Shown piece by piece: positions 9,893 through 54,686 of a stretch of DNA of 63,919 nt. Each line of letters begins with the position of its first letter. Within the stretch, counting starts at the first letter, position 1. The stretch lies in contig NC_068982.1 in assembly GCF_001194135.2 (NCBI RefSeq), forward strand, positions 98,442,197 through 98,506,115. The letters run 5' to 3'. A program made the translations under genes and the position numbers. The DNA comes from Octopus bimaculoides (taxonomy: Eukaryota). The notes below the pieces were generated by a model. That model did no database searches, was not told the DNA's origin, and saw only the letters and a list, made by a program, of their open reading frames with translations.

Positions 9893-10769
9893 AATAATAA
9901 TAATAACTACTGGGATCGATTTGTTCAACTAAAATTCTTGAATGCGGCGTGGCCGCAGTTCAATGATTGAAACACGTGGAAAATAAAAGATGATCATCGG
10001 ACCAGTAAAAGACAGCCAAGAAGATATTAGCAAAAAGCTGAGCGATTGTGTTTTTCTCTTCCGCCAATTATTCAGATATTCCTGAATATTAAACTTATAA
10101 CGTAACCACCCCGAAAATTATAATTATCATAATGCAAGTACATTTCCGAGCAAATGATGATGCGGAACCTCGTTTAATCTGGACATAATTATGTGAGGAA
10201 TCTTTAATTTTAGGTTGCCAATATTAATGTCATTTTCGTCACATGGTTCTCACTACATACATGGGTTTAGTAACAAGTAACATATCACGATGGCAGAAGC
10301 ATTCTCCATTCACTTGTCGTAAATCATATGAAGATGCAAATGTTTAAAACTAGATCTAACACCGCGTACTAACCGCCTAAGAACCCTTTCTTTAGGAAGA
10401 ACAAGTTGACAGATAACTTATCTTCACTACAAAGAATATAGTGTTCCACCATGAAAAAGGAAAAGGAAAACATACGCCCTTCCTTGTTACGTTTCCAGAA
10501 AATGTCCAGCGAAGGCCCAGTGATTTAGTAGCTTGAGATTTAGTTTTAAGTATTTTCACCTTCATGTTATTATAGAAGACTGCAAGAATTTATCAAACTT
10601 TATAACATGATTCTAGTGAATAAACAAAAGTTTAATGGCGAAAGTGTTAAAGTGGTCGTAGACTTCTAAGAATTTACTTCAGAATTTCTTTATGTAAGCT
10701 CTGTTAATCCGGCAAAATGAATAATCTGGCACGCGTCTTGACCAAAGATGCCGGAAAATTGATGTTCCT

Positions 10770-12340: not shown

Positions 12341-12386
12341 ATATATATACTGTGTATGTGCATATATATACTTATGTGTGTGTATA

Positions 12387-12756
12387 GGCGCAGGTGTGGC
12401 TGTGTGGTAAGAAGCTTGCTTCCCAACCATACGGTCACGGGTTCAGTCTCGTTGCGTGGCACCTTGGGTAAGTGTCTTTTACTATAGCCTCGGGTCAACT
12501 AAAATCCCACGTGTGGATTTGGTAGAAGGAAACTGAAAGACGCCCGTCGTATACATACATACATACATACATACATATATNNNNNNNNNNNNNNNNNNNN
12601 NNNNNNNNNNNNNNNNNNNNNNNNNNNNNNNNNNNNNNNNNNNNNNNNNNNNNNNNNNNNNNNNNNNNNNNNNNNNNNNNNNNNNNNNNNNNNNNNNNNN
12701 NNNNNNNNNNNNNNNNNNNNNNNNNNNNNNNNNNNNNNNNNNNNNNNNNNNNNNNN

Positions 12757-12789
<33 letters not shown>

Positions 12790-13030
12790 GTATACATGTA
12801 TGAATGTATACATATATGTGTGTGTGCCTTTGTGCCCATGTTTGTTCTCCCATCATCGCTCGACAACCGCTGATAGTGTGCTTACGTCCCCGTAACTTAG
12901 TTGTTCAGCAAAAGTGGCCAATAGAATAGATACTAGGTTTACAAAGCATAAGTCCTGGGGTCATCGACTAAAACCTTTTAAGGCGGTGCTCCAGTGTGGC
13001 CGCAATCAAATGACTGAAACAAGTAAAAGA
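12387..13030 (+). mobile_element. SINE family A, full length, with internal microsatellite and gap
   Basis: tRNA-like head ggcgcaggtgtggctgtgtggtaag, core ggcaccttgggtaagtgtc, tail aaggcggtgctccag...tgactgaaacaagtaaaaga. Confidence 0.9.
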
Positions 13031-13035
13031 ATATA

Positions 13036-13880: not shown

Positions 13881-15320
13881 CAAAGCATTAATATATGCAT
13901 ACATACATACATACATACATACATACCTTCATGCATACAGTTACATATATACATACGCACATGAGTGCGTACTTAAGCGCGCGCGCGGATCCGTGTATGT
14001 ATAGTAATATTTACATTTATGTGAGCGTCCCGCCCACCTCAACTTTACCATTCACTATTCGGGGTGAAGTTCTGAGGTCAGTAATATCAACTATTCTCTT
14101 CCTTAAATTTTTTGGTTCTGTGCTGCTAGTGTTACAAACCAATATCTATTCCTGCTTTTGGTGCCTAGTTATTCTCCATATTTATACTTTATGGCATCGA
14201 ACGCAAATGGAAACAATTTTTCTTCTATCCATTCAACCAATAAATTTTATGGGTGCTAAAATTAGGAATAATTATTTCTTTTAGTTCCTACCGTTTTGAA
14301 CTACGAAAGTGCCAAATTTTCATTGTTAATGCATAATATATTACTGAAATCAATTTAATATTGTTTTATGAGCTCACAACTAGAGAGTTTAATACTTTAG
14401 TCGACAGTCAACATCATCTTGATATTAACATAGGCTAAAACCCCGGAATCCGATGAAATTAGTGATGGTCTGCTAACGTTGAACATGCTTTCAAGTTAAA
14501 ATAATAAATCTAACTTAATATGAAATAATCACATGCATAGATTAAGATTTAGGGACAGTTTAATGGTTATCATTTCGTCATTGGCCCTTCCATCTGTATC
14601 TCTATCACATATCACACAGATTTATTTCTTTGTTATATGCAATGTCACGAAAGATTTGTTTTACGTATTTTATCTAATAACATCATTTCACGTTAGATAA
14701 TATTATCTAAGGTAAATGCTTCACACACACGCAACTATGCTATTTCTCATCTATAACATTTTATCCAGCTTAGACATACCATAATTCCACAAGAAACGTG
14801 AAAAGAAACAGAGTGCCTGTGTATATTTCAATCTTCGTATCTAGAATTCGATGTTTTCATAAAGAAAATAACAAGATAAGACATAAATGAGAAGTATTTT
14901 CTTGTGTTCAGACAATTAATGCTATTTCCTCATATAAATTAATTTTTATCTGATAGTATGTTCTTTATTTTTTTTCTTCTATTGTCGCCTGTCTGGTCTC
15001 TCATTATTAGAGTCACCACCCTGTAAGATATCACCGTATATAATGATGTCTTATTTATAGTTATTATTTATTTTGATCATTTTCTTCTTTTGATGTTACA
15101 ATTAGTAACAATTTGTACACTGAATGACATATTCAGTAGAGCTTGTATTATTTGCGTCTCTTTACATTCTGAGTTCAAATCATAACCGGATCAATATAAT
15201 CAAACATGCAAATTTATAGCGTTGTATCTTTGTTGTGGTTGTTTTGGTGTCAGCAGCACATCATTTCGAGTTGGTCGTAAGTTTGTCCGTCGGTTCGAAT
15301 GTTCAAAAGTTGTTAATTTA

Positions 15321-15380
15321 TCCTTTATCCTTTTACTTGTTTCAGTCACTGTAACTATGGCCATACTGGAGCATCGCCTT
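15321..15380 (-). mobile_element. SINE family A 3' tail fragment, directly downstream of the 7SL copy
   Basis: Minus strand aaggcgatgctccagtatggccatagttacagtgactgaaacaagtaaaagg matches the tail of the other family A copies. Confidence 0.8.
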
Positions 15381-15392
15381 AATTTTATTTTT

Positions 15393-15692
15393 AAAGGTTG
15401 GAGTCCAATTATATATCGAACAGGCTACCAGCCGACGACTATTCACAGGCGCGATCCAACTACTGCTCGACACGGGGTCTTTTGCTTGCTGCATTTCCAC
15501 CCTCAGCCGAAGTGACCCTCCTTAGACAATCTGGTCCTGATGAGCTACCTCTCCAGTACCATACTGATGCCAAGCTTAGCACGGGCATCCGATTGCCATA
15601 TAAAACCAACTACCATGACTCTCATCCTCAAACCGGCCAACCAATCAGGCCTTCGAGTAAATGGATTATAGGAGCACGCTACAACTCCCGAA
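15393..15692 (-). ncRNA. 7SL: 7SL / SRP RNA full-length copy (probably a retroposed pseudogene)
   Basis: About 300 nt, colinear with metazoan 7SL as I recall it: Alu-like 5' end CGGGAGTTGTAGCGTGCTCCTATAATCC..TACTCG; TATGGCAATCGGATGCCCGTGCTAAGCTTGGCATCAGTATGG; TTGTCTAAGGAGGG; helix-8-like AGG-GTG-GAAA-TGC-AGCA; CAGTAGTTGGATCGCGCCTGTGAATAG (15439-15465); ends CCTTT followed by AAAAATAAAA. Confidence 0.9.
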
Positions 15693-15735
15693 ATTTTGTT
15701 ATATAATAGTCGTTTGAGCCAGTAAGAACTCGCTG

Positions 15736-15813
<78 letters not shown>

Positions 15814-18270
15814 TATTCATTTTGTTTTTTGTTTGTTCGTTTCCTGCCTTTTTTGGAAGAAGCATTTTCAAATTTTATGTTTGAAAAGCACTTTTTTTAT
15901 TACAAACATGGCATCGCCTTCCACAGTCCGCAAACTGATAGAAGAGGCAGTAAGTGACTGGCAGCAGAACGATTTTCACGTGTTTACTTCTTCAAAGGGA
16001 AGCCAACAAGATGACGGTAGATATTTATGTTAGAAAAAAAAAGGTGAGACCATCATGGCGAGAACATCGACAGGAGCTAAACAACGATAACAAATTCGCA
16101 AAAGAGTTTGTTATCCTTTAGGCATAGCTTTCCCTGACTAATATTACAGTATAACTGCCTTATTTAATAACTGTCAGAGATCTGGTTGCTATTTCTAGCG
16201 GGTTGAGCGATCACGTAGAGGCTCTCTCCTTGGTTCATTGTATCACTTGCCTCATTTATAATAAAATAAATTTCTTTCACTCTCTCCTCTCTCTCCCACT
16301 CTCCCTCTCGCCTCTTTCTCTCCTCTCTCCCTAATCTATTTTATTTTGGGTGTAGGTAAAGTATGGCCGAATAATTGAAACGTTTCGCTTCGCGATCAAA
16401 GCTCCTGTATTCCAACCCTAAGCGTTGCCTCTTGGACATGTGTCATTTTCTTTGGTTTCATGTCGGCCTATACCTTGTAAGTGAAAAATCGTTCTTGTAG
16501 TTCAGAAGGTACAGCCCTTACGACCATATCACAATGCTTCACGTTGATTCTGGCTAATAATTATTTCAAGAGTACACGTGCCCCTGTGGAATGCTCAACT
16601 ACTTACACCTTAATTCAGGAGCAGGTAATGTAGTAGACCAAACAGCCGAATTCTCATCACTGAACAGCGTTGATCCACCACCATCACCACTACCACCACT
16701 GTCACCACTACTACCACCACCACCACCACCACCACCCTATCTCGGGCAGTGTTGTAATGTCGATGTATATTTAACAGTTTCCACTGACAAAGCGAATCAT
16801 TGTTGCCTCCTTCCATAAAGTCGACGTTAGTCAGAGTCTCCTAGATGCTTAGTGACTTTCTTAATCGAGTTTACATTTGATCTTGGAAATATTTCTGTTC
16901 ATAGTAGCCAACAGTTAACCAGTTGGTACTAGAGTGTGTTAACTCTTTAATGACAGAGAAGCACACTCTTTCTTAGTATGGTTTCTTTCATACAACACAG
17001 TCATCTCTTTACACACATTCACAGTTTCTTTTCTTTAATTAACTTGTCTTTCAACTTCACTCATACATACCTTCGCCTAAACAACTAATCAACAATTGGC
17101 ACAATTTTCTCTTTGTATCCTCTCACTTATTCATGCATTTCATAGTTTAACTGCCACTCTGTTCTCAGTCTCGCTCGCTGTTTCTCTTGGATGTCTTTCT
17201 CATCAGACAGCTCATACCAAGAATCTATATCTGTTTACGATGGTCGTTCTCTAACATTAAATTTGGTCTTCTGACAGTTGTGGATATACAAATGTTGTAT
17301 TCAAAATCCCAACAGTGTTTTTCTTATTCTCTAGAATAGGTTCTTTATCCTATTTAATATTACGCCCAAACTTAGTTTAACTGTCGGATTTCTGCGTTTA
17401 AATTCTATTTAATACTTTGAATAATTCAAAGATACCATCTGCATAAAAAGCAATAGGGTTGTTAGTATGAATTGATGTGATACATACAACCTTAGAAACA
17501 TAACTAGAAATAGATACGTAGTGAGGGAGAAATCCTATCTGTGAAAGGTTCCCTATATATANNNNNNNNNNNNNNNNNNNNNNNNNNNNNNNNNNNNNNN
17601 NNNNNNNNNNNNNNNNNNNNNNNNNNNNNNNNNNNNNNNNNNNNNNNNNNNNNNNNNNNNNNNNNNNNNNNNNNNNNNNNNNNNNNNNNNNNNNNNNNNN
17701 NNNNNNNNNNNNNNNNNNNNNNNNNNNNNNNNNNNNNNNNNNNNNNNNNNNNNNNNNNNNNNNNNNNNNNNNNNNNNNNNNNNNNNNNNNNNNNNNNNNN
17801 NNNNNNNNNNNNNNNNNNNNNNNNNNNNNNNNNNNNNNNNNNNNNNNNNNNNNNNNNNNNNNNNNNNNNNNNNNNNNNNNNNNNNNNNNNNNNNNNNNNN
17901 NNNNNNNNNNNNNNNNNNNNNNNNNNNNNNNNNNNNNNNNNNNNNNNNNNNNNNNNNNNNNNNNNNNNNNNNNNNNNNNNNNNNNNNNNNNNNNNNNNNN
18001 NNNNNNNNNNNNNNNNNNNNNNNNNNNNNNNNNNNNNNNNNNNNNNNNNNNNNNNNNNNNNNNNNNNNNNNNNNNNNNNNNNNNNNNNNNNNNNNNNNNN
18101 NNNNNNNNNNNNNNNNNNNNNNNNNNNNNNNNNNNNNNNNNNNNNNNNNNNNNNNNNNNNNNNNNNNNNNNNNNNNNNNNNNNNNNNNNNNNNNNNNNNN
18201 NNNNNNNNNNNNNNNNNNNNNNNNNTATATATAAGTAATGGGAAGAAATAACAAGAGATGCATGTTTTCG

Positions 18271-24165: not shown

Positions 24166-27135
24166 TGTTGGGTGGCCATTGACTGTTCAGGAGTTCTCCG
24201 CCCTTTGACGGGTCTTATTTTTCATCATGCACGGTGTCCAAGAACACCCTCCTCACCAGGCAAGCCTGGTAGGATTACCAGTTTAGTCGCCGACGACCCG
24301 ACCATGCGACAAGTCGTACTGGATGACATGTTACCAGTAGCACTCAAGAGTGACCTGGATGCACCCAAGATCTAAGCACTGGCATCTCATAGATTATATT
24401 CTGATCAGAAAACGTGATATGAAAGACGTTTCTAGATTTCGGGCCATGAGAGAGGCAGAGAGCTGGACTGACGATCGTCTAGTGCGTGGAAAAATAAATT
24501 TTTCGATAATGCCTAAAAATTGACAGCCTGATTCTAAGGTACCCAAAAAGTCCAATGTTGCAAACTTTAAATTATCAAGCAACTTGCAAAGATTCCACGG
24601 TGCTAGGGAAAGTATCAATCTTGACCCAAACATTCTATGGGAAGATTTCAAAACAAAAGTGTTTCAGGCTGCAAGTTCGTCTGTGGGATTTAAATCACAT
24701 AAGTCCAGTGACTGGTTCTCAGATAGATCAGCAGAAATTCATGATCTACTTTTAGAAAAACAAAACTTAGGCAATATACTTCTTTCTCAGTCTTTGAACC
24801 CCAATTCAAACAAAGCTTACAGAAAGCTGAAAAGGGAAAGTGCAGACTTCTCTAGGGAAAATTAAACAGAACTGGTGGAATGATAGAGCAAAAGGGGCAC
24901 GAGAAGCAGCTGATAGAAATGATGCCAAGGGTTTGTACTCTTATGTTAAGGAGGTATATGGCCCAAACTCCTCTTCAACAGCTCCAGTGAGAACAGCAAA
25001 TGGACGTTTGCTTGTGACTGACACCGCTTCTATTCATAAGCACTGGATAGAACATTTTTCTACACTTTTGAATAGACATTCAACCGCTGATATGAGGACA
25101 AAAGAAGAAATCGAACACCTTCCAGTTATAAAAAAATGGCATTTCAACCAACTCTAAATGACATTTATTTAGCTGTGAATAAGCTGAATAACAATCAGTT
25201 TCCAGGGTCTGATGGAATCTGTGCTGAAGTTTTGAAATATGGGGATGACAAAATGTTTTGAACTCTTAAATATATTAATTTGTCACTGTTGGAGAACTGA
25301 GAAAGTGCTTAAAGACTGGATTGAGGCCATTTTAGTCTCCTTGTATAAATCGGGGCCAAAGGGTCTGTGTGGTAATTTTCGTGGAATTTCGCTTTTGTCT
25401 GTAGTTGGAAAGGTACTTGCTCGTATTTTGTTAGAACGTTTAAATACCTTCATTGTTCCAAATATAGTGTCTGAGTCTCAGTGTGGTTTTTGTTCCTCCA
25501 GGGGCACAGCTGATTGTATCTTTACTATCAGACAATTACAAGAAAGTGCATTGAACAGAATCTTGCGCTATTCCATTGCTTTGTTAATTTGAGCGAAGAA
25601 TTCGATACTGTTAATCGAAATACTCTGTGGCTAATTCTAAGAAAAATAGGTTGCCCAGAAAAATTTATGAATATGATCAGGGCTTTGCATCAAGATATGA
25701 AAGCTAGAGTTAACTTTGGTGGTAGGCTCTGAATCTTTTGCCGTGGAAAATGGAGTAAAGCAAAGAGACCTTGATGCACCCACCCTCTTATACTTTGCTG
25801 TGTTGTCTCATACTTTTCAAAACTTTGAGGAGGGTATTTACATAAAATATCGAACAACGAGGAATATTTTTAATCTAATCAGACTGAAATTCAAAACGAA
25901 GATTTTTACTTCACTCATTAGGATTGCGAAGCAGGATTCTGAAACAGGTCTGCAATCTCTTGTATCTGCACTTGACTCAGCTTGTGATGATTTTGGCTTG
26001 ACCATCAACTTGGAAAAGACAGTTGTAATGCATCAACCTGCGTGTGGTGCTGTTTGTAACTCCGCTAAAATTTTTGTTAAGGGGAAGTTACTTGAGTTTG
26101 TCGATTCGTTCATCTACCTTGGAAGCTCTGTAAAAAATTATGGAAATCTTGATACAGAAATACATCTGCGAATTCAAAGGGCAGCAAAAGCATTTGATGG
26201 ATTGGAGTCACGCGTTTGGTGCCAACGACATATAAATAAGAATACAAAGCTGGCTCTTTACAAATCATTTGTCTTACCATCCCTGTTGTATTCTTGTGAA
26301 ACATGGACTTGTTATGAATGGCATTTTAAATTGTTAGAACAATTCCACCAAAAATGCCTTTATTGTATTTTAAACATTAAATGGAATTCTTTTACTGAAA
26401 ACACAGATGTCCTTGCATCTTCAGGCATCACCTCAATTAAAGCTACGATTTTGAGGAACCAAATGAGATGATGTGGCCATATTTTTCGAATGGCGGATGA
26501 ACGCATGCAGAAACAGCTGTTTTATGGTGAACTTGAAGAGGGGAAATGCTATAGGTGTAAACCTAAAAAAGGGTTTAAGGAAGGCATAAGGACTACTATG
26601 AAGTCACTTGAAATGGATCCAGAAAACATAGAAACCCTTGCTTCGGATCGAGTTGGATGGCGAAGAAAAGTGTGGAGTGGAGTGAAAGCGTTTGAAGAGG
26701 CCAGGATAACGCAAGTAAGACTCAAAAGAGATCTAAGGAAGAATGTTACAACCGAGAAGGTGAATCACAATGATCTTTTTGCGTGCGCAGTTTGTGACAG
26801 CTCATGCCTTTCTTTTGCTGGCCTCAAATCTCATCTGCGAACGCATGGAAAACGAACTTCCACCAACTATTCTGCCTATATGTATGTGCACACCTTTGAA
26901 TGCAGTGTATTCCAGAAGGTTTGCAAATCTAACGGGGGCCTCAAAAGACATTTTAAGATCCACAAAGATCAGAATTTATCTGCAGCTCTTGGTGGTCCAA
27001 ATCGGATTTGCGATCTATGTGGGTGACTTTTCAGAACATTGTCTGGTTTAAAAAGCCACATCAGATACCAGAATGGTTCTAAGGGGTAGGTACAGGAAGT
27101 GGTCAAACTCTACATAAGGATTAGACAACCACCAT
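24166..27135 (+). mobile_element. RTE/BovB-like LINE, near full length but internally deleted and frameshifted
   Basis: TWMHPRSKHWHLIDY (APE C-terminus) at 24353; RT motifs FRGISLLSVVGKVLARIL, ESQCGF, GVKQ, GLTINLEKT, FIYLGS, SLLYSCETW; catalytic ADD motif missing; C-terminal C2H2 fingers; (TA)-rich tail. Confidence 0.95.
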
Positions 27136-27922: not shown

Positions 27923-28815
27923 TACGGTCTGATCAATAAGTATCCGGGTTGTTGCAATAGAAACGAATATAAAGCACGCAGAGTGAAGCCGCTTGGCAAC
28001 GATTGATCTTGAACTCTTCTGTGCATGCACACTAAGTTTTAATGTTCTAGCTTACGTCCACTGTTTACAGACAGCAGTGCTTGAAAGGAAGGTATGTAGC
28101 TTGTGTGATCGTCGCATTGACCATGACAGAGAAAGTTGTCATGGCGATACTTGCTCAGAGGCCTACGCAATGTTGCAGAAAGTGTATGGAGAGGAGTGTA
28201 TGAGCTGCACACAAACGTACGAGCGGTTCAGGCGTTTCCAAGATGGCCGAAAAAATGTCGATATTGACGAACGTTCTGGGAGACCCGTAACTAGCAGAAC
28301 TGAGAAAAACATCGCAGATGTGCATGCAGCTGTAAGAGGAAATCGTCGAATCACCATTCATGAGTTATCAGAGGATGTGCGGATTAGTTAAGGTTCAGTT
28401 CAGTCCATTATCTTTGGATATGAGATGCGTGTCTGTTAAGTTTGAGCCAAAACTGCTTTCAGTTGACCAAAAAGACACTCGGGTTTCAGTTGCACAAGAT
28501 CTCCTTGATTGTGTCGAGAACGATGAAAACTTTTTGAAAACTTTGCTTAGGCCTCTGAGCGGGTATCGTCAAGCCTTTGGCAAAATTTGATGCAGATTCT
28601 CTGCTCAACTTTCTCTGTCATGGTCAATGTGACGATCACACGCTACATACCTTCCTTCCAAGCACTGCTGTAAACAGTGGAAGTGAGCTATAACGTTAAA
28701 ACTTAGTGCGCATGTACAGTAGAGTTCAAGATCAATTTGTGCCAAGCAGCTTTACGTTGCGTGGTTTAGTTTCGTTACTATGGTGACAGTCCGGATACTT
28801 ATTGATCAGACCATG
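27923..28815 (+). mobile_element. Mariner-derived element made of two inverted 5' ends
   Basis: TIR GGTCTGATCAATAAGTATCCGG at both ends. Transposase N-terminus SEAYAMLQKVYGEECMS...RSGRP...NRRITIHEL on +. The right arm (about 28542-28815) is an inverted copy of the left end and ORF start. Confidence 0.85.
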
Positions 28816-31770: not shown

Positions 31771-32660
31771 ACGATATGGTGTGGTAAAGCTGGAAATTAG
31801 AGTAGCATGTCTCCTGAGGTGATTGGAGAGATTCAGAGGAGACTTAAGCGTATAATTTTTAATAAGAGAAGCTCTCTCTTATGCTAATAGATTCGGCTGG
31901 CCCGAAATATAAAAGTCGCCTCATTAATGACCTCATCTGACATGTGGTCAACCGTAAATATCATGTCAGAGAACTGAGAAATAAGATGTGTAAGATGTAA
32001 TTAATGAAATTAATCAAAACCAATTATGTATACGGTATTAGTTAAGCGTTGCATCGTTCTACTTCTTCCTTACCATTGACTGATGCCATTACAAGTTATC
32101 GCTTACGATCCGGTTTGAATTTCCGGTAGAAACCAATTTCATTCACTTAAGCTGTTACACTCCTGGAAGAGATGTATTTACTGGCGCGAGTTGACTATTA
32201 AAACAATAAAACCACTCATTTGCAGCACCAATGGATGCGTCTTTTGTGTGGTTATTTTTTCAAAGTGCTGGGTTTATTATGGTGCAAATGGTAAATTGCA
32301 ATTTATTTTTTAATAATCTTTAATCTTTAATCTTTAATCTTTAACTAGTTTCAGCTTGAAAGCTGCGGTAATGCTGGAGCACTACCGTTGGATTTGCTAC
32401 ACCTTCATTATTTGAGACCTTCTCTGATGTGTGGCATTTGCTGAATGTGGAAGTTTGATGCCGCTGTCCTCATCTGTGTTTCTTGCCGTGACGTAGGCTC
32501 ATCCAGAACCCTTGACGGGAGGAGCTCCAGTTTTGTTTTGAAGGCACCCACATTGTCACCAAGCAGTACAATTGATTGGTTGCACTTAGAGCATCAGTTA
32601 TCCCTATTCCGGCCATGTGTCTATGTTACATACTGTTATTATTATTATTATTATTATTAC

Positions 32661-32706
<46 letters not shown>

Positions 32707-33974
32707 GTTGTTGTTGTTGTTGTTGTTATTCGTTTCACTACAATGCTCCAGCCTGTAGCTAAAAAAAAGAAAGTACTACAAATGTGTGCCGTTTACGTTT
32801 CCGTAACTATGGAAACAAGAGAACCGTGTGGTATCAGGAGCAGAGGACGTAATTGACCAAACGTCTTTGTGCATTAAGAAACGGTTCCTTCGAGTTGAGT
32901 TCAAATATATCGAGGGTTAACTTAGCTATTTTCGTCGTTCGGTAACATTTATAAATACTTATTTTTAGGTTAATTTTGGGATTTAGTCAGAGGAGGAAAG
33001 GCACCGCCCATAACCGTCTGATGAATCTCCAAGACTACTGAGTGAAAAAGAGGAAGAGGAACGACGGTTCTAAATGGTTTTACAAGAAAGGAGTCAATTA
33101 AAGGGACCCAAAGTCCAGCCGATGGTGTTAAACCAGACGTGCACCGATGTCTCAGCGTATCGATTCCACATACTTCTTCAAAGATTAATCAAGTCCTTAA
33201 AAAATCCTGAATCATGAGAACAGCCAACAATGAGTCGATTTCATGATCCGGTCTTTCTCCTATTGCTCACTCTTTTTTATTTCACTTTATAACATTAAAT
33301 CTTCAGACAAAAAGGTTAACTCCACCACTCCCCACTTCGTGTTCTCTATGAATCTCAAAGCGCTGATGGCCAAATGTTAATGGTACCAGGTAGGCAGTTT
33401 TGGACGGCTTGAGGGGTAATGGATACTGACCTACCTTTGAAAGATTCTACCTTGTCCCAGGCACTGCATTACTGCATGATTGGAATTTAACTCTCATTAG
33501 CTAAATTCAGCAAGTACCAGGTAGGTAAGGTATGTGGTAGAACACCTGGTTATGAACAGCTGTAGCATTGTGACGAGTGAATTGTTGGTATGTAGTGTTA
33601 ATAAAAATTCAGTTGGCGTCATCCTTTCCAGGGAATATTTATTTCATATCCACTTAGCGTTGCCGGAAACAGGGGTAAGATAAGCATGTTATTTGGTAAA
33701 AGATTAACTATATATCTGAAACCTTGTACTTTATCAAAATACATAATTGTAGAAAAGGGAGTAAATGGACAAATTAATGTGATTTATAGTCTGTTAGTTT
33801 ATTCCGCTTATCCCTTTTCTGATTACAGTCATTGCATTGAGGCCATGGTAGGGCACCACTACAAATACTTATTTCAACCTGACACTTATTTTATCGTTTT
33901 ATACTAATCGAATAGCTAAGTTAAATTCTTGATATATAGTGAGTTAACCTCGACACATCAGTTTATACCACTAT

Positions 33975-34706: not shown

Positions 34707-35946
34707 TATACCGAGCATTGATTTCGATCGCAAACCATATGGTCTCGAAACACCCATCTTAACTACACAATCATTCCTGAGTTTATAGACTGTTAACTTG
34801 CTTTATTATTCTCTGCTTTTATGCGCTTCAGTCCTAAGGCTGTGGCTATGCTGGAGCACCGCCAGAGAAAAACAGGTAATGGGTGTATGACATTGTTCAG
34901 GCGTTCTTGCTCTTCCATCAACATCACATTTGCTTTTTGTTATTTTTTTGTTTATTCTTTCCTTAGAAAAAATTCCTTTTACCACGCAAACATCATTATC
35001 TCGTCTACTGTATACTGATGGACATAATTAGAAGTCCGTTGAATAAATGGCAATTAAGTAAATTTGTCATGACGGTTAAACAAATATAATTACAAGATGT
35101 GATATAATATCTTTAGATGTGCAATGACAGAAAGGTAACGGTTTTTAAATATATAATGTCGGATAGGAACGGCTAAGATAATTCTTAAATGTGGCCTGTC
35201 TTGCCAAGAAAGTGAGAGATATGGAACAACATAATACTTTTTCTTTTTGAAGTCCTTTCCTTATAAATTAAAGGAGATTCGGTGTCTGCTGTTTACGTCA
35301 TCTGTTAGGCGGATGAAATCTGATGGTAGACATTTCAATGTGCTATGATGGGCAGAATAGGGATGTTAATGCCATGAAATACACCCATTTAGGTAGGTTA
35401 ACTGCCGAAAATATTATCTTAAATCTACGAAAAAATGTCGGTAAAAAAAAATTAGAAGCATATGATCTGAAATGGGTCAGTTCAGTTCAAACGAATGAAG
35501 TACACAAACATACACACACACAATCACACACACACACACATACACACACCACACACACACACACACACCACACACACACACATACACACACAACTCACAT
35601 ACACACACACATACCTGCACTCACACGCACGCACACATGCAGGAACGCACCCAAACATACACATACTTAGACTCACATAGGTATCATCGCTTGTCATCTC
35701 TGGACGAACAGAACTATGACCATAGGCGCTCCAGATCTGGATATCTCGTTTTATTTCGCGACAGTGTGTAATCTAAAATCTTATTATCCAATTCATCTTT
35801 TATTTTCTAAGGTAGTATGATGTGAATTAAAGTTGGATCCTTAGGGTTGTGTTACGATAATTTGAGAAAACACATTTCACATGAACAGGTAAACGAATGT
35901 ATATATATGGGTAATTACGGGGCAGGGGTTAATGATTATTAAAGCA

Positions 35947-43124: not shown

Positions 43125-43422
43125 AGGAGTGGCTGTGTGGTAAGTAGCTTGCTTACCAACCACATGGTTCCGGGTTCAGTGCCACTGCGTGGCATCTTGG
43201 GCAAGTGTCTTATACTACAGCTTCGGGCCAACCAAAGCCTTGTGAGTGGATTTGGTACACGGAAACTGAAAGAAGCCTGTCGTATGTATGTATNNNNNNN
43301 NNNNNNNNNNNNNNNNNNNNNNNNNNNNNNNNNNNNNNNNNNNNNNNNNNNNNNNNNNNNNNNNNNNNNNNNNNNNNNNNNNNNNNNNNNNNNNNNNNNN
43401 NNNNNNNNNNNNNNNNNNNNNN

Positions 43423-43464
<42 letters not shown>

Positions 43465-43660
43465 TCCCCCCAACATCGCTTGACAACCGATGCTGGTGCG
43501 TTTACGTCCTCGTAATTTAGCGGTTCGGCAAAAGAGGGAGATAGAATAAGTACTAGGCTTCCAAAGAATAAGTACTGGGGTCGATTTGCTCAATTAAAGG
43601 CAGTGCTCCAGCATGGCCACAGTCAAAAGACTGAAACAAGTAAAAGAGTAAAAAAGAGTA
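43125..43660 (+). mobile_element. SINE family A, full length with internal gap
   Basis: Head, core, internal (TG)n and tail all present. Confidence 0.9.
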
Positions 43661-44470: not shown

Positions 44471-44910
44471 GAGTGGCTGTGTGGTGAGAAGCTTGCTTCC
44501 TAACCTTATGGTTCCAGGTTCAGTCCCAGTGCCTGGCACCTTGGTCAAATGACTTCTACTATAGCCTCGGGCTGACCAAAGCCCTGTGAGTGGATTTGGT
44601 GAACGGAAACTGAAAGAAGCTCGTCGTATATATATGTGTATATATATGTGTATGTATATATATATATATATATATNNNNNNNNNNNNNNNNNNNNNNNNN
44701 NNNNNNNNNNNNNNNNNNNNNNNNNNNNNNNNNNNNNNNNNNNNNNNNNNNNNNNNNNNNNNNNNNNNNNNNNNNNNNNNNNNNNNNNNNNTATATATAT
44801 AGGAAAATGAAAAAAAGCCAGAATGCTGAACTGGGAGTATAATTTAATAAAGATTTTTTCTAACCGGTTTTCTCCACGTGCGGTTAACACAACCCCACTA
44901 TTTACTGACT

Positions 44911-44941
<31 letters not shown>

Positions 44942-45180
44942 GTATGTGTGTCTTTGTATCTGTGTTTGCCCACCCCCCAATCAACGCTTGACAACCGATG
45001 CTGGTGTGTTTACATCCCTGCAACTTAGCGGTTCGGAAAAAGAGACCGATGGAATAAGTACTAGACTTACAAAGAATAAGTCCTCGGGTCGATTTCCTCG
45101 ACTAAAATTCTGTAAGGCGGTGCTCCAGCATGGCCGCAGTCAAATGAGTGAAACAATTAAAAGAATAGAAGAATAGAAGA
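44471..45180 (+). mobile_element. SINE family A with internal gap and extra sequence
   Basis: Head/core at 44471-44627; tail at 44945-45180. Confidence 0.85.
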
Positions 45181-45680
45181 ATGCTAGAGTCCGTTTTCTC
45201 GACTAAACCCTTCAAGACGGAACCCCATCATGGTCGTCGTCCAATGACTAAAACAAATAAAAAACAGAAAAATACAAAAAGACAATAAATGAAGTATTGA
45301 GAAACGTTACGTGACAACATTTCAGCTATAACATAAGATTTCTGATAGTGGCTGTTGAAGCACTTGGTTATGTAATCGTCTCCGTTGCCAACCAGGATTT
45401 ATAAGACTAGAACCATACACAACTAATTAAGAAATGTTAATTACAGATCATTAAAGGTGAAAATGTGTAAAATAGGTAAAGTTTACTCCGTAATAATTAC
45501 TCATAGACATGTAGAAGTAGATATACGAATATACACACACGCACACATATAAAGAGAGAGACAGAGAGATATGTATGTATGTACGTATTTATGTATGCAT
45601 GTATGTGTACATATGTCTACCCAAAACCAGATCCACTCCTATAATGACATGCAAACACACATACAGGCACACACGCACGA

Positions 45681-49081: not shown

Positions 49082-49332
49082 TACAGCAGCAGCAATAGTA
49101 GTAGTAGTAGTAGTAGTTGTTGTAGTAGTAGTAGTAGTAGTTAAAAAGAGGGGTGAAAGGGTGGAGGACAGCGGGAATAGAATGCTGATGATGGAAATGA
49201 CAGTGTGGAAGAAGAAAAGGTAAAAAAAAACAAAAAACTAATAAACGCAACAATAGCAACATCAGTAAAAACAATAGCAACAATGACAATAACATGAACT
49301 ACTATTACTGCTGAAACTACTACTACTACTAT

Positions 49333-49392
<60 letters not shown>

Positions 49393-50045
49393 AGCTGCTG
49401 CTCCTGCAGAGAACCTATACTGCAATTGTGACAAGAATAGCAACAGCAATCAATGCAGCGAAATATTAGCAACAATTAACCACAATGACTGCAACACCAA
49501 TAATAGCAACAATACTGAAGCAATAAGCGGCATTCGCAACAGTAACAATAACATATACTGCGATAGCAGCAACTTTGAGTACAAGGATTGCTAATTTGAG
49601 GGGAGTGGGTGAGTCGAAAGCAACGAGTTCGGAACTTGACAAGTAATTCCTGTGTTGACTTCAGTGGGACTTCCACTGAGAAGGAGTTTGAGCTGGGATA
49701 AATACCGCAAGGCATTTTGTCTGGGGTTCTAACGTGTAGCGGCATGAGCAACAAGAGTTGTATCAAAAACAACAATAGCAACAATGATATTATCCACAAT
49801 AGCAAGAGTGTCAATGACAACGATTACAGTCACCAACACCAGTAAGAACAAACTTAGTCATGGACAATAGCAACAAGAATAACAATGACAACGACATTAA
49901 TAGTTGTAGCTTTAACAGCAATTACAGTGACAGCAATGACAACGATTGCAACAATAGTAATCACAGCAATAACGATAGCAACAAAAAAAACTACGATAGC
50001 AACATAAGGGACTATAGCAACCCAAATAACAATTTCAACAACCTC

Positions 50046-50123
<78 letters not shown>

Positions 50124-50254
50124 CTACTGACTTGTAATAAGATGCACCATCCAAAGGCAGGCGTGGATCGTCTTTACCTCCCCAGAGCTCAGGGAGGTCG
50201 AGGCTTGATCCAGCTTGAACTTACGTACAAAACCACCACAATCGGACTGGCCAA
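50124..50254 (+). mobile_element. R4/Dong-type LINE fragment starting in (TAA)n, running into a gap
   Basis: MHHPKAGVDRLYLPRAQGGRGLIQLELTYKTTTIGL, the conserved post-RT motif of R4/Dong elements. Confidence 0.85.
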
Positions 50255-51399
50255 NNNNNNNNNNNNNNNNNNNNNNNNNNNNNNNNNNNNNNNNNNNNNN
50301 NNNNNNNNNNNNNNNNNNNNNNNNNNNNNNNNNNNNNNNNNNNNNNNNNNNNNNNNNNNNNNNNNNNNNNNNNNNNNNNNNNNNNNNNNNNNNNNNNNNN
50401 NNNNNNNNNNNNNNNNNNNNNNNNNNNNNNNNNNNNNNNNNNNNNNNNNNNNNNNNNNNNNNNNNNNNNNNNNNNNNNNNNNNNNNNNNNNNNNNNNNNN
50501 NNNNNNNNNNNNNNNNNNNNNNNNNNNNNNNNNNNNNNNNNNNNNNNNNNNNNNNNNNNNNNNNNNNNNNNNNNNNNNNNNNNNNNNNNNNNNNNNNNNN
50601 NNNNNNNNNNNNNNNNNNNNNNNNNNNNNNNNNNNNNNNNNNNNNNNNNNNNNNNNNNNNNNNNNNNNNNNNNNNNNNNNNNNNNNNNNNNNNNNNNNNN
50701 NNNNNNNNNNNNNNNNNNNNNNNNNNNNNNNNNNNNNNNNNNNNNNNNNNNNNNNNNNNNNNNNNNNNNNNNNNNNNNNNNNNNNNNNNNNNNNNNNNNN
50801 NNNNNNNNNNNNNNNNNNNNNNNNNNNNNNNNNNNNNNNNNNNNNNNNNNNNNNNNNNNNNNNNNNNNNNNNNNNNNNNNNNNNNNNNNNNNNNNNNNNN
50901 NNNNNNNNNNNNNNNNNNNNNNNNNNNNNNNNNNNNNNNNNNNNNNNNNNNNNNNNNNNNNNNNNNNNNNNNNNNNNNNNNNNNNNNNNNNNNNNNNNNN
51001 NNNNNNNNNNNNNNNNNNNNNNNNNNNNNNNNNNNNNNNNNNNNNNNNNNNNNNNNNNNNNNNNNNNNNNNNNNNNNNNNNNNNNNNNNNNNNNNNNNNN
51101 NNNNNNNNNNNNNNNNNNNNNNNNNNNNNNNNNNNNNNNNNNNNNNNNNNNNNNNNNNNNNNNNNNNNNNNNNNNNNNNNNNNNNNNNNNNNNNNNNNNN
51201 NNNNNNNNNNNNNNNNNNNNNNNNNNNNNNNNNNNNNNNNNNNNNNNNNNNNNNTCTTAAATACATGTTTTACCTATGAATTTGCGTGTGTAAATTGGGA
51301 ATGCATACAACGTTTCTCTGCCCTAGGTGTACGGAAAACACTCGGCGAGAAATGGGAAAAAATTTGAAGAAAGAAGAAAAAAAAACATAATAATAATAA

Positions 51400-51490
51400 T
51401 CAATACAGTAACCATAAGAACACCACAGCAAACCACAGCACATACCGAAGGCGCACAGAGCTGCACTCGGTAGTGAAGTGAAAGCACGTT
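51400..51490 (+). mobile_element. Dong-type 3' UTR-only insertion in (TAA)n
   Basis: Matches 9781-9871 (caatacagtaaccataaga...gtagtgaagtgaaagcacgtt); TAA repeats on both sides. Confidence 0.85.
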
Positions 51491-51500
51491 AATAATAATA

Positions 51501-51544
<44 letters not shown>

Positions 51545-52578
51545 AATAATAGCAATAACAAAAACAACTTCAAAAATATCTACAACAACGTTAATAATTA
51601 TGACGATACAAATCGTGGCAAAGACACCTGTAACATTAGCAACTGCCAACAAACAACCTTGTCATTAGCAATGATCGCAAGAAGTAACATTTGCAATATT
51701 AACATCAACGATAGCAACCTTAAGAGAAACAACAACAATATCTCAATAACAACAGTAAGATTACCGCCAGGAGAAAGCCATAGCAACGACAACAACAATA
51801 TAAATAATAATAATAATAACAATAGCAACTTAAGGAGCAGTAACAATAATATAAACATCAGCAGCGACACCAGCAATATTGATAACAGTAACGTTAGCAA
51901 TCAGAAAATATCAACTATACCAACAAACAACAAACACAACAACAACAACAACAACAGCGTCAACTGTTACAACAGCAGTAACAACAACTGCCGCAGTAGC
52001 ATGTGTACCAACAGCAACGAGAGAAATTACTGCAGTAACCACAACAACAACAATGTCTGCGTCAGTGAAATGATTGCACCAACAACTGCAGCAATCTCAA
52101 CAACTGCAGTAGGTGGTGGTGGTGGTGGTGGTGGTAGGAGGGGGTAGGGGGGTAGGAAGAGCAATAAGGGCGATGGGAATATAAACAAGTTGAGAAATAA
52201 TAATAATAATAATAATGTCAATAATAACTGTATTGATGTATAATAACTGCAGCAGTAGAGACAACGTCGACAACAGCAGCAACAGCATGATGAATAATAA
52301 CAACATCATCATCAGCAGCAGCAGTAGCAGTAGCAGTAGCAGAAACAGCAACAGCAAAAACAAAAAACAAAAACAGCAGCAGTAGCAACAACAACCACAG
52401 CAGCATAAATGTTAGCAAGCAACTGCAGCAACGGAAATAACAACAGCAGTGATTACAACTGCAGCAGGTTTTAACACCATTAACATCAACAGGTGCATCT
52501 GGAACAACAGCAAATAGTTGCAATGGGAGCAACTGCAGCAGCAGTAAGAACGTTAACAAAAGCAGCAGCAGCAGCAGC

Positions 52579-52610
<32 letters not shown>

Positions 52611-52657
52611 CAACAACAACAATAATAATAATAATAATAATAACAATAATAATAATG

Positions 52658-52715
<58 letters not shown>

Positions 52716-52761
52716 TGATGATGATGATGATGATCATGATGATAATAATAATAATAATAAC

Positions 52762-52816
<55 letters not shown>

Positions 52817-52817
<1 letters not shown>

Positions 52818-53030
52818 TTTCTACTAAAGGCACAAGGCCAGACATTTTTTGGGGGTGGGGCGGGTAAGTCGATTACATCGACTCCAGTACTCAGCTGGTA
52901 CTTATTTTTTATCGACCTCGAAAGAATGAAAGGCAAAGTCAACCTCAGCGGCATTTGAACTCGGAACATAAACACGAACGAAACGCCAATAAGCGTTTTG
53001 CTCATCATGCAAACGATTCTGCCAGCTCTC
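52817..53030 (-). mobile_element. SINE family C, degenerate
   Basis: Reverse-complement homology to 34510-34706. Confidence 0.8.
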
Positions 53031-54686
53031 GCTGCCTTAATAATGATGGTGATGATGATGATGATGGTGACGGTGACGACATTAACAGCCTCAGTAAAAA
53101 CTGGAGCAGCCGCAGCAATGAGTACAACAGCAACTGCAGCAACAGCAGCAGCAGCATTAACGGCAACAAAAGGAACTGCAATAATAGAAAGTAAGCGAGG
53201 GGATCCCCTATAGTATTGCTTGACATGCTAGAAGCAGTAGCCAGTTCCCCCTGAAATCGTTTTTAGCAAAAGAAGTGTTACGCTGATCCTGAACAATTGT
53301 GGCTGACCTGGAGCAAAGTCACAACAATAATAATAACATGAACAAGAATAGCAAATAGAAGCAACTGCAGCAAGAACACAAAGTGCAACATCGGCAACAA
53401 TGACAACAACATCACTGCCGCAAACAGCGACGGTAACATAGGAAACAAGAAGCACATTGCCAAGACTAACGTAGACAGTAACAACATCAACAATACAAAC
53501 AAACAGCAACACCCGACATCGCTTGTACAACGACACCAGTGCCGCCACCTCCACCATCAACCACAGTAACGTCAGCGCCGATGCGGACACCAACGCCACC
53601 AGCGTCTCTAACATTAGTACAACAAGAAAAGCAAGTTCACAGTTACAAACAGCACCACCACCAATAATGACAACAATAGCAACAGCAGCGACACCTACAG
53701 CAAGATTAACAGCATTGGCAATATTAAAACCGCCATCACCAGCATCATCAATCGCCAACACCAAGAACAAGACCAACAATAAATATATCAACGCTACCAG
53801 CATTAACACCTTCACCGCCAACGTCAGCAAAGCCAACGCCGACATCAACGCCACCTATAGCAGCAGCAACAGCAGCAGCAGCAGCAGCAGCAGCACAACG
53901 TTGACACTACCAATACCGACATCAATATTACCGTCGTCACCAATAACAACAACATCAGCGACACCTGCATCAGCAGCAGCAGACAGCGCCGAGAAGTAGC
54001 AGAAGTCGAAGACGGACAACAACATTGCCTTGAGTGTCGGTGTGAGGAGAAGGTAATGTGTACTGTGAAAGGACAGCATTATCGATTAGTAGCGCCTGTC
54101 TAGTGTGCCGTAGGTCCATGACTCACTCGGTGCTGGGTGAAATTGTTCACACTATTGCATTGGCCGTTCATCACTACACACTTCGTCATCGCCTTCCTAC
54201 TGTTGCTGCTGTCGCTGCTGCTGCTGCTGCTGCTGCAGCTGCTCCTGCTGTCGACGATGGTGCAGATGTTGTTGTTGTTGTTGTGTAAGTAGTGGTAGTG
54301 GTGGTGGCGGCGGCGGCGGCAGCGGATGTGGTTATTGGCGTTGGTTGGTAATGATGTTGCGAATGTTTAATCTGGCAAACATGGCTGCTGGTGGTGTTGC
54401 ACAATTTTGTTTGTTACCCTTGCTGATTGTCGTTATTGTTGCTCTTGATGTAGGTATAGCTGGTAATATTGTTGTTAATGTTGCTATTGTAAATGGTGGT
54501 GGTGGTGGTGGTGGGGCAGTTATGAGATTTTTTTTTGATGATGCAGTGATGGCTGTCGTTAGTAGTGGCTGTAAATATTAATATATTATTATTATTAATT
54601 AAATATTATTATTATCATTGTCCTTTAATATTTTGATTTATATTAGCCCTTGTGGCCAATAAAAGAATTATTATTATTATTATTAA

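What the first reader, a model, noticed from the sequence alone, without database searches (positions are those of the whole stretch)
15321..15692. Full-length 7SL RNA copy joined to a SINE 3' tail: possible 7SL-SINE chimera in a mollusc
Seen: on the minus strand a 300-nt 7SL copy ends CCTTT, continues AAAAATAAAATT, then runs directly into the 3' tail of SINE family A in the same orientation. Established: snRNA/7SL-retroelement chimeras arise by template switching, and the 7SL-derived SINEs I know of are from vertebrate lineages. Inference: either (a) a chimeric retrotranscript or nascent 7SL-headed SINE, or (b) a 7SL retrocopy inserted next to or into an older SINE. The near-repeat AACAAAATT (5' flank) / AATAAAATT (3') could be a target-site duplication, which favours (b).
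Basis: partly seen in the sequence, partly recalled or inferred. Interest (0 to 1): 0.75.

Follow-up and report, generated by a model that had tools for sequence, protein, structure and literature searches.

The report
Dead 7SL copy with retroposon tail
A worn-out, full-length copy of the 7SL (signal recognition particle) RNA gene in an octopus-type genome sits directly in front of the short two-hairpin 'tail' that the local jumping elements use to get copied; it is most likely a one-off accident of reverse transcription, and nothing here shows a new family of mobile elements.

Summary
Rfam finds one full-length metazoan SRP RNA at 15692..15393 (minus; 169.6 bits, model 1-299). It ends CCTTT, is followed by AAAAATAAAATT, then by a ~64-nt retroposon tail in the same orientation (15380..15317).

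The 7SL copy is very probably dead:
- A24 replaces the G of the UGUNR U-turn.
- A13 and A40 hit loop L2 and helix 4.
- A TTTT run lies inside it (nt 88-91), and only TTT stands at its end.
- Helix 5 is weak.

The "SINE tail" is a self-contained module of two covarying hairpins plus A-rich repeats. It also occurs alone at three other places in the window, always starting at the same point.

The 5' flank is not SINE sequence.

My ranking:
- One-off template-switch chimera, about 0.45.
- Two separate insertions, about 0.3.
- Live gene plus a SINE scrap, about 0.08.
- 7SL-headed SINE family, about 0.05.

The decisive tests are genome-wide copy count, an orthologous empty site, and reads.

The parts
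15393..15692 (-). Full-length 7SL (SRP) RNA copy, 300 nt, very probably a pseudogene
   Evidence: Rfam RF00017, 169.6 bits, model 1-299/299. The S-domain motifs are intact. A13, A24 and A40 sit at conserved G positions. 89 of 120 consensus pairs are canonical.
15602..15605 (-). TTTT run inside the 7SL copy (7SL nt 88-91), a Pol III stop signal in the middle of the RNA
   Evidence: T-run listing.
15381..15392 (-). A-rich spacer AAAAATAAAATT between the 7SL end (CCTTT) and the tail. Its last 7 nt (TAAAATT) may already be SINE-derived.
   Evidence: Sequence. MAFFT places TAAAATT against CTAAAATT of SINE copies c45k and c9k. The significance of that match was not tested.
15317..15380 (-). Retroposon 3' tail module: hairpin 1 (15378..15359), hairpin 2 (15357..15343), then GAAACAAGTAAAAG and (GATAAAG)-type repeats
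   Evidence: blastn and nhmmer matches. 86% identity to the in-window consensus. Two-hairpin fold with covariation across 10 copies.
15305..15308 (-). First TTTT downstream of the 7SL 3' end, 9 nt past the end of the tail
   Evidence: T-run listing.
15693..15708 (-). A/T-rich 5' flank TATTATATAACAAAAT(T).
   Evidence: Sequence. The duplication is not above chance. No SINE homology.
15739..15812 (-). (GA)n microsatellite 47 nt upstream of the 7SL copy; context only
   Evidence: Sequence; matches other GA repeats in the window.

Best explanation
A single, decayed, full-length 7SL pseudogene is joined at its 3' end, through a short A-rich spacer, to a complete copy of the roughly 60-nt 3' module carried by the local SINEs (two hairpins plus A-rich repeats), which is presumably also carried by their partner LINE. 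I think one event made it. A LINE reverse transcriptase began target-primed reverse transcription on an RNA carrying this tail. It copied the tail as far as the base of the first hairpin, then switched template to the 3' end of a 7SL RNA and copied that to its 5' end. What is shown: the three parts, their order and orientation; the damage to the 7SL; the hairpin structure of the tail and its occurrence as a stand-alone unit. What is inferred: that both parts arrived in one event, and that the 7SL part came through RNA at all.
For: (1) The architecture is that of known template-switch chimeras: a full-length small RNA ending at its own 3' terminus, followed by the 5'-truncated 3' end of a retroelement in the same orientation. 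(2) The 7SL is not a working gene. It has A24 in the UGUNR U-turn (G24A/G24C reduce SRP9/14 binding, PMC11581171), A13 in loop L2, and A40 breaking the middle pair of helix 4. 12 of 68 highly conserved model positions are changed, 8 of them G>A or C>T. 31 of 120 consensus pairs are non-canonical. The whole-molecule fold has z = +0.7. There is an internal TTTT and only TTT at the end. (3) The tail is a functional-looking unit. Its two hairpins pair in 84.6% of cells, against 19-48% in slid controls, and 5 pairs change on both sides (2 of 500 shuffles reach this). It occurs alone three more times, starting within 3 nt of the same point. This is the piece a tail-dependent reverse transcriptase would copy first. 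(4) Chance adjacency is unlikely. With 3-4 stand-alone tails per 54 kb, a same-strand tail starting within 13 nt of a given point is expected about 5e-4 of the time (my arithmetic). (5) The 5' flank is not SINE, so the 7SL did not land inside a full element. (6) The tail here is the most diverged copy in the window: 86% to consensus against 90-94% for the others, and 5 of its 7 changes are G>A or C>T. That is the same decay spectrum as in the 7SL, compatible with one old event. (7) There is a precedent in the same window: an 85-nt SINE 3' fragment sits directly behind the tail of a full SINE (45182-45266).
Against: No target-site duplication encloses the whole unit. The best candidate, TAACAA, reaches only P=0.07 window-wide and P=0.53 AT-matched. 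Described chimeras are usually fused directly, and here there are 5-12 extra A/T-rich bases. AAAAA could be a single T>A change away from a TTTT terminator, so the A-run does not prove an RNA intermediate. A dead DNA-level gene copy with a later tail insertion gives the same picture. A/T-rich sites may attract insertions, which would raise the chance-adjacency figure. No second copy, no empty site and no reads could be examined. The real 7SL of this species is unknown to me, so 'damage' is judged against the Rfam consensus and the literature on mammalian 7SL.
Confidence: 0.45

Rival explanations
1. Two separate events. In one order, a 7SL pseudogene (a retrocopy or a dead DNA duplicate) was already there and a severely 5'-truncated tail-only retroposon copy later inserted into the A/T-rich sequence 12 nt past its end. 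In the reverse order, the 7SL retrocopy landed at the 5' edge of an older tail fragment.
For: Tail-only fragments starting at the same point are common in this window: three others, at 32388..32331, 33859..33819 and 34863..34812. A stand-alone insertion is therefore an ordinary event. The spacer is A/T-rich, the kind of site many LINE endonucleases prefer (own knowledge). Short repeats exist for both orders, AAATT around the tail and AAYAAAATT around the 7SL. The tail fragment behind SINE copy c45k could equally be an insertion into a tail.
Against: Both short repeats are at chance level (P=0.74 and 0.42 AT-matched). Expected chance adjacency in the same orientation within 13 nt is about 5e-4 before any target preference. 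The 5' flank carries no SINE sequence.
Confidence: 0.3
2. It is a live 7SL gene of this animal, with a lineage-specific Alu domain, that happens to have a retroposon tail fragment 12 nt downstream.
For: It is full length with a high Rfam score. The S domain is intact: helix 8 GGAA loop with flanking AGG/AGCA, helix 6 GUAG (GNAR), and GGAUCGCGCCUGUGAAUAG identical to human. GC is 50% in a roughly 35% GC window. The upstream sequence is A/T-rich and TATA-like. It is the only 7SL in the window.
Against: A24 replaces the G of the U-turn whose G24A/G24C mutants lose SRP9/14 binding (PMC11581171). A13 and A40 are at conserved positions. TTTT at nt 88-91 would stop Pol III, and there is no T4 at the 3' end. 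Helix 5 is no better than shuffles. The TATA-like run lies at -16..-7, not near -30. Box A matches 6 of 10 positions, and box B matches at most 7 of 11, and only out of place at nt 7.
Confidence: 0.08
3. It is a member or founder of a 7SL-headed SINE family: a 7SL head providing the Pol III promoter and the hairpin tail providing recognition by the LINE. Read-through past the weak TTT to the TTTT at 15308..15305 would give a mobilisable RNA of about 388 nt.
For: Head plus complete tail module is the blueprint of a SINE. The hagfish SINE1-1_EBu arose in just this way, from a 7SL sequence and an older tRNA SINE (PMC7245038). The first T4 after the 7SL end lies just past the tail.
Against: There is one copy in 64 kb where the tRNA SINE has about 9. 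It keeps the whole S domain, whereas the described SINE1 lineages (Alu/B1 and the hagfish family) carry a large central deletion of the 7SL (PMC7245038). The Alu domain, thought to be required for SINE1 spread, is damaged. The internal TTTT would end most transcripts at nt 91. The tail copy is old.
Confidence: 0.05

Closest known systems
Template-switch chimeric retrocopies (U6, 5S, 7SL and other small RNAs fused to LINE-1 3' ends in mammals; tripartite chimeras in Magnaporthe)
   Same: A full-length small RNA at the 5' side and the 5'-truncated 3' end of a retroelement at the 3' side, in the same orientation. 7SL is among the RNAs recorded in such chimeras (bioRxiv 10.1101/2025.02.02.635956; PMC2104539).
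   Different: The host is a mollusc. The 3' partner is a structured hairpin tail of the kind used by tail-dependent LINEs, not an L1 poly(A) end. There is a 5-12 nt A/T-rich spacer, and no demonstrable target-site duplication.
SINE1-1_EBu, the 7SL-derived SINE of hagfish
   Same: A 7SL sequence joined to the tail part of an older tRNA-derived SINE that an RTE-type LINE mobilises (PMC7245038). That is the same kind of join as seen here.
   Different: The hagfish element is a family with 2363 full-length copies, has lost the S domain, and keeps a foldable Alu domain. Here there is one decayed copy with the S domain and a damaged Alu domain.
Processed 7SL pseudogenes of mammals (Ullu and Weiner 1984, as cited in 10.1101/2025.02.02.635956)
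   Same: A dispersed, non-functional 7SL copy followed by A-rich sequence.
   Different: According to my own knowledge, the mammalian ones are mostly 3'-truncated and flanked by clear direct repeats. This one is full length, has no significant repeats, and carries a foreign tail.
Shared 3' stem-loop tails of LINE/SINE pairs (Kajikawa and Okada 2002, cited in PMC10886601)
   Same: The tail module here has two conserved, covarying hairpins followed by short repeats, as expected for a 3' end recognised by its LINE's reverse transcriptase.
   Different: The partner LINE was not found in the window. Recognition is inferred, not shown.

Membership tests
Metazoan SRP (7SL) RNA, Rfam RF00017 | Covariance-model score above gathering over the full model | tested here: met
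   169.6 bits against 70, model 1-299/299.
Metazoan SRP (7SL) RNA, functional gene | S-domain motifs: helix 8 tetraloop with SRP54-binding loops, helix 6 GNAR loop, 5e/5f region | tested here: met
   GGGUGGAAAUGCAGCA, GUAG, and GGAUCGCGCCUGUGAAUAG read off the alignments.
Metazoan SRP (7SL) RNA, functional gene | UGUNR U-turn with G24 (SRP9/14 binding) | tested here: not met
   The sequence reads UAUAA. G24A/G24C reduce binding (PMC11581171).
Metazoan SRP (7SL) RNA, functional gene | Loop L2 to loop L1.2 tertiary pairs (G13-C37, G14-C34 in human numbering; own knowledge, Huck et al. 2004 not held in the library) | tested here: not met
   A13 faces C, G14 faces U, and G33 is replaced by U.
Metazoan SRP (7SL) RNA, functional gene | Pol III terminator (at least 4 T) at the 3' end and none inside | tested here: not met
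   TTT at the end, TTTT at nt 88-91.
Metazoan SRP (7SL) RNA, functional gene | Stable helix 5 | tested here: inconclusive
No cephalopod reference was available.
Metazoan SRP (7SL) RNA, functional gene | Expression as an abundant RNA of about 300 nt with this exact sequence | not testable with these tools
Processed small-RNA retropseudogene | Target-site duplication flanking the RNA-derived part | tested here: not met
   AACAAAAT/AATAAAAT: P=0.20 window-wide, 0.42 AT-matched.
Processed small-RNA retropseudogene | Homology to the parent gene stops at the RNA ends; A-rich tail | tested here: inconclusive
   The copy spans exactly model 1-299 and is followed by AAAAATAAAA, but the parent gene's flanks are unknown.
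Template-switch chimeric retrocopy | Full-length small RNA followed by a 5'-truncated retroelement 3' end in the same orientation | tested here: met
Template-switch chimeric retrocopy | One target-site duplication enclosing both parts | tested here: not met
   Best candidate TAACAA: P=0.07 window-wide, 0.53 AT-matched.
Template-switch chimeric retrocopy | Both parts absent together at the orthologous site of a relative | not testable with these tools
   No cephalopod DNA in any searchable collection.
SINE1 (7SL-derived SINE) | Many dispersed copies sharing the head-tail junction | tested here: inconclusive
   One copy in 64 kb and no further SRP-like hit down to E = 1.
SINE1 (7SL-derived SINE) | Head reduced to a foldable Alu domain with the S domain deleted | tested here: not met
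   The full 300-nt 7SL is present and its Alu domain is damaged. Comparison with PMC7245038.
SINE1 (7SL-derived SINE) | 3' tail shared with a LINE or an older SINE | tested here: met

The most novel reading that the evidence does not exclude
The locus is a relic of, or a source for, an independently born 7SL-headed SINE in cephalopods. A whole 7SL RNA would have been captured onto the two-hairpin tail that octopus LINEs recognise, the same route by which the hagfish SINE1 arose. That would make it the first such element outside vertebrates.
Probability: 0.05. Interest if true: 0.75.

Novelty: new member of a known kind. Interest (0 to 1): 0.3.

Why it matters
If the one-event reading is right, this shows that the reverse transcriptase behind the huge octopus SINE load can switch template onto an unrelated Pol III RNA and paste it in with a mobilisation tail attached. 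That is the raw step from which new SINE heads arise, as proposed for the hagfish 7SL SINE. As a single decayed locus it changes nothing else: it is neither a working SRP RNA gene nor a demonstrated mobile family. The practical by-product is a clear definition of the roughly 60-nt two-hairpin tail module, which also occurs on its own and is useful for annotating retroposon scraps in this genome.

Tried and rejected
I therefore did not feed it accession numbers found in papers, and no read evidence was obtained.

(2) I looked for other copies through spurious ORFs that overlap the 7SL, the junction and the 3' flank. Exact look-ups found nothing, and a homology search of the antisense 102-aa ORF found nothing.

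(3) I tried to sample more of this genome through its transposon proteins. The LINE RT ORF gave 4 ENA hits at 43-50% identity. The mariner ORF gave 3 hits at 67-71%. None led to cephalopod assemblies.

(4) Metagenome scans with a 7SL pattern and with a SINE-tail control, plus a viral-contig control, all returned 0. Because the controls found nothing, the negative 7SL scan is uninformative.

(5) By eye, the 5' flank seemed to continue the SINE body (CGACTA, AGTTCT). This idea was rejected. The best local score was 12, below the null mean of 14-15, and the profile-HMM score of the reconstructed empty site was 34.9 against a null of 34.7 (P=0.33).

(6) None of the three target-site duplication readings (7SL alone, tail alone, whole unit) is above chance.

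(7) Sub-domain fold z-scores (S domain, first 50 nt) do not separate this copy from human 7SL and were not used.

(8) ARAGORN finds no tRNA in the window. The tRNA origin of the SINE head rests on the literature (PMC8967140, PMC4758252) and on box-like motifs seen by eye.

(9) The partner LINE was not found. The LINE fragment at 24.5-27.0 kb does not share the tail.

Full report
**What is there.** A scan of the whole window against Rfam gives a single hit above threshold. It is a metazoan SRP (7SL) RNA on the minus strand at 15692..15393: 169.6 bits, E 2e-44, covering model positions 1-299 of 299. A permissive scan down to E = 1 adds no other SRP-like piece; its other hits are microRNA models firing on TG/TA microsatellites.

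Read on the minus strand, the order is as follows:
- a (GA)n repeat (15812..15739);
- 47 nt of unique, increasingly A/T-rich sequence ending TATTATATAACAAAATT;
- the 7SL copy, ending GGACTCCAACCTTT;
- AAAAATAAAATT;
- AAGGCGATGCTCCAGTATGGCCATAGTTACAGTGACTGAAACAAGTAAAAGGATAAAGGATAAA (15380..15317);
- TTAACAACTTTTGAAC.

The AAGGCG... stretch matches the 3' end of a SINE that occurs about nine times in the window. Copies lie at 12383-13033, 39727-39360, 43125-43652, 44471-45167 and 61415-60985, with fragments elsewhere. A profile of seven copies gives 34.3 bits, E 5e-10.

From its SINE and its microsatellite-bounded gaps, the genome looks like an octopus. Published work describes octopus genomes as dominated by tRNA-Core and tRNA-Deu SINEs (PMC8967140, PMC4758252). 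ARAGORN does not call the SINE heads as tRNAs.

**Is the 7SL a working gene?** Probably not; I put the chance that it is dead at about 0.85.

In its favour, the S domain is well kept:
- the helix 8 GGAA loop with its flanking AGG/AGCA;
- a GUAG (GNAR) loop on helix 6;
- a 19-nt stretch, GGAUCGCGCCUGUGAAUAG, identical to human.

The Alu domain, however, carries changes at positions that are conserved across the family:
- The U-turn UGUNR reads UAUAA (A24). G24A and G24C are reported to weaken SRP9/14 binding (PMC11581171).
- Loop L2 reads UAGC instead of UGGC (A13), and its partner loop has UU where G and C are expected.
- A40 breaks the middle pair of the three-pair helix 4.

Further signs of decay:
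- 12 of the 68 most conserved model positions differ, and 8 of those are G>A or C>T.
- 31 of 120 consensus pairs are non-canonical, though some of these reflect alignment register.
- The whole-molecule fold is no better than shuffles (z = +0.7).
- The two strands of helix 5 give -44 kcal/mol with z = -0.6.
- As a Pol III template the copy is wrong way round: it has TTTT inside at nt 88-91 (15605..15602) and only TTT at its end.
- The TATA-like run upstream lies at -16..-7, not near -30.
- Box A matches the human box in 6 of 10 positions, and box B matches at most 7 of 11, and only out of place at nt 7 (boxes as quoted in PMC7245038).

I could not compare it with the real 7SL of this species, so this verdict rests on the family consensus and on mammalian biochemistry.

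**What the "SINE tail" is.** A profile search of the window shows that the last ~57 nt of the SINE also occur on their own. They lie at 32388..32331, 33859..33819 and 34863..34812 (E 7e-6, 1e-3, 2e-7). Each starts within 3 nt of the same point as the piece behind the 7SL (profile positions 128-132). Their upstream sequences are unrelated to each other and to the SINE.

The module folds into two adjacent hairpins followed by A-rich short repeats; the consensus fold is -17.8 kcal/mol with z = -3.2. Across ten copies:
- 84.6% of cells are paired, against 19-48% when the partners are slid.
- Five pairs change on both sides, a count that 2 of 500 shuffles reach.
- The copy at 32.3 kb has both stems rewritten compensatorily.

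This is what the 3' recognition element of a tail-dependent LINE/SINE pair looks like (Kajikawa and Okada 2002, cited in PMC10886601). The partner LINE itself is not in the window. The piece behind the 7SL is thus a complete mobilisation handle rather than a random fragment, and it need not come from "SINE family A" as such. Its two stems are still pairable. It is 86% identical to the in-window consensus, against 90-94% for five other copies, and 5 of its 7 changes are G>A or C>T.

**How the two came together.** I tested the three possible target-site duplications against random site pairs from the same window:

| Reading | Candidate repeat | P, window-wide | P, AT-matched |
|---|---|---|---|
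| Around the tail alone | AAATT | 0.27 | 0.74 |
| Around the whole unit | TAACAA | 0.07 | 0.53 |

None is informative.

The 5' flank is not SINE. Its best local alignment to the SINE body scores below the null mean. Adding it to the tail does not raise the profile score beyond what random flanks give (34.9 against 34.7, P=0.33). I had thought I saw CGACTA and AGTTCT in register; that impression did not survive the tests. So the 7SL did not land inside a full SINE.

What remains is adjacency. With three or four stand-alone tails per 54 kb of called sequence, a same-strand tail starting within 13 nt of a given point is expected about 5e-4 of the time. Target preference for A/T-rich sites could raise this several-fold.

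Template-switch chimeras have exactly this layout and are documented for 7SL and other small RNAs with LINE-1 in mammals (bioRxiv 10.1101/2025.02.02.635956) and in a fungus (PMC2104539). In a genome whose main reverse transcriptases need a structured tail, template switching would also be the easiest way for a tail-less RNA such as 7SL to be copied at all; that last point is inference. The window holds a parallel case: an 85-nt SINE 3' fragment directly behind the tail of a full SINE at 45182-45266.

I therefore rank the readings as follows:
- One-event chimera, about 0.45.
- Two separate events, about 0.3.
- Live gene with a downstream retroposon scrap, about 0.08.
- 7SL-headed SINE family, about 0.05.

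The 12-nt spacer is the main loose end for the chimera. Its last seven bases (TAAAATT) align with CTAAAATT of a SINE subfamily. That would leave only AAAAA between the two RNAs, but I did not test this for significance. AAAAA is also one T>A change away from a TTTT terminator.

**Comparison with what is known.** 7SL-derived SINEs are described only from Euarchontoglires and from hagfish (PMC7245038, PMC10886601). The hagfish family is reported to have arisen by fusion of a 7SL sequence with an older tRNA SINE that an RTE-type LINE moves. That is the same kind of join as here, which is why the locus is worth a note.

The differences are large. The hagfish element has 2363 full-length copies, has lost the S domain, and keeps a foldable Alu domain. 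This locus is single in 64 kb, keeps the S domain, has a damaged Alu domain, and carries an internal Pol III stop. I therefore file it as a new example of a known kind, a chimeric or composite small-RNA pseudogene, not as a SINE.

**Limits.** No route to other cephalopod DNA worked:
- ORF look-ups;
- protein searches;
- pattern scans with a negative control.

Copy number, the orthologous empty site and expression decide between the readings, and all three remain untested. They are listed as next steps.

Noticed in passing
window 32331-32388, 33819-33859, 34812-34863 (all minus strand): Three stand-alone copies of the ~57-nt two-hairpin tail module lie within 2.5 kb, in the same orientation, and each starts within 3 nt of the same SINE position. 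Their upstream sequences are unrelated to each other. The copy at 32.3 kb has both stems rewritten by compensatory changes and a (TTAAAGA)n tail.
   Followed up: partly
window 45182-45266 (+): An 85-nt 5'-truncated SINE 3' fragment sits directly behind the repeat tail of the full SINE copy at 44471-45170. This is the same 'element plus appended tail' layout as the 7SL locus.
   Followed up: partly
window 15343-15378 and all SINE 3' ends (alignment A2): The SINE/LINE tail forms two adjacent hairpins with covariation: 84.6% of cells are paired, and 5 pairs change on both sides. It is probably the reverse-transcriptase recognition element. The partner LINE is not in the window.
   Followed up: yes
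window 24584-27026 (+): A decayed LINE fragment with RVT_1 and a C-terminal zinc-finger-like ORF split over several frames. Its nearest database proteins are only 43-50% identical, from metagenome assemblies. It does not share the SINE tail.
   Followed up: partly
window 27993-28391 (+): A mariner-type transposase N-terminus (HTH_48), with 67-71% identity to three short database proteins.
   Followed up: partly
window 12978-13000, 45100-45120, 9940-9960, 45200-45216: A SINE subfamily carries 8-9 extra bases (AAACCCTTC or AAAATTCTKT) just before the tail module, right at the body/tail boundary. One variant resembles the 7SL 3' end (GACTAAACCCTTC against GACTCCAACCTTT, 9 of 13). This may be coincidence.
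   Followed up: no
window 15911-15955 (+): An ATG is followed 42 nt later by GTAAGT, about 220 nt from the 7SL start and pointing the other way. It could be a first exon. The 66-aa ORF containing it has no Pfam match.
   Followed up: partly
whole window: There are 9,534 N in many blocks, nearly all bordered by TA, TG or GA microsatellites, so these are assembly gaps in simple repeats. Rfam E-value hits to mir-297, mir-466, mir-3149 and similar all fall on such repeats and are artefacts.
   Followed up: yes
window 49100-54000: A long low-complexity tract of AAT/AAC/ATT-type trinucleotide repeats gives spurious poly-N, poly-D and poly-I ORFs on both strands.
   Followed up: no
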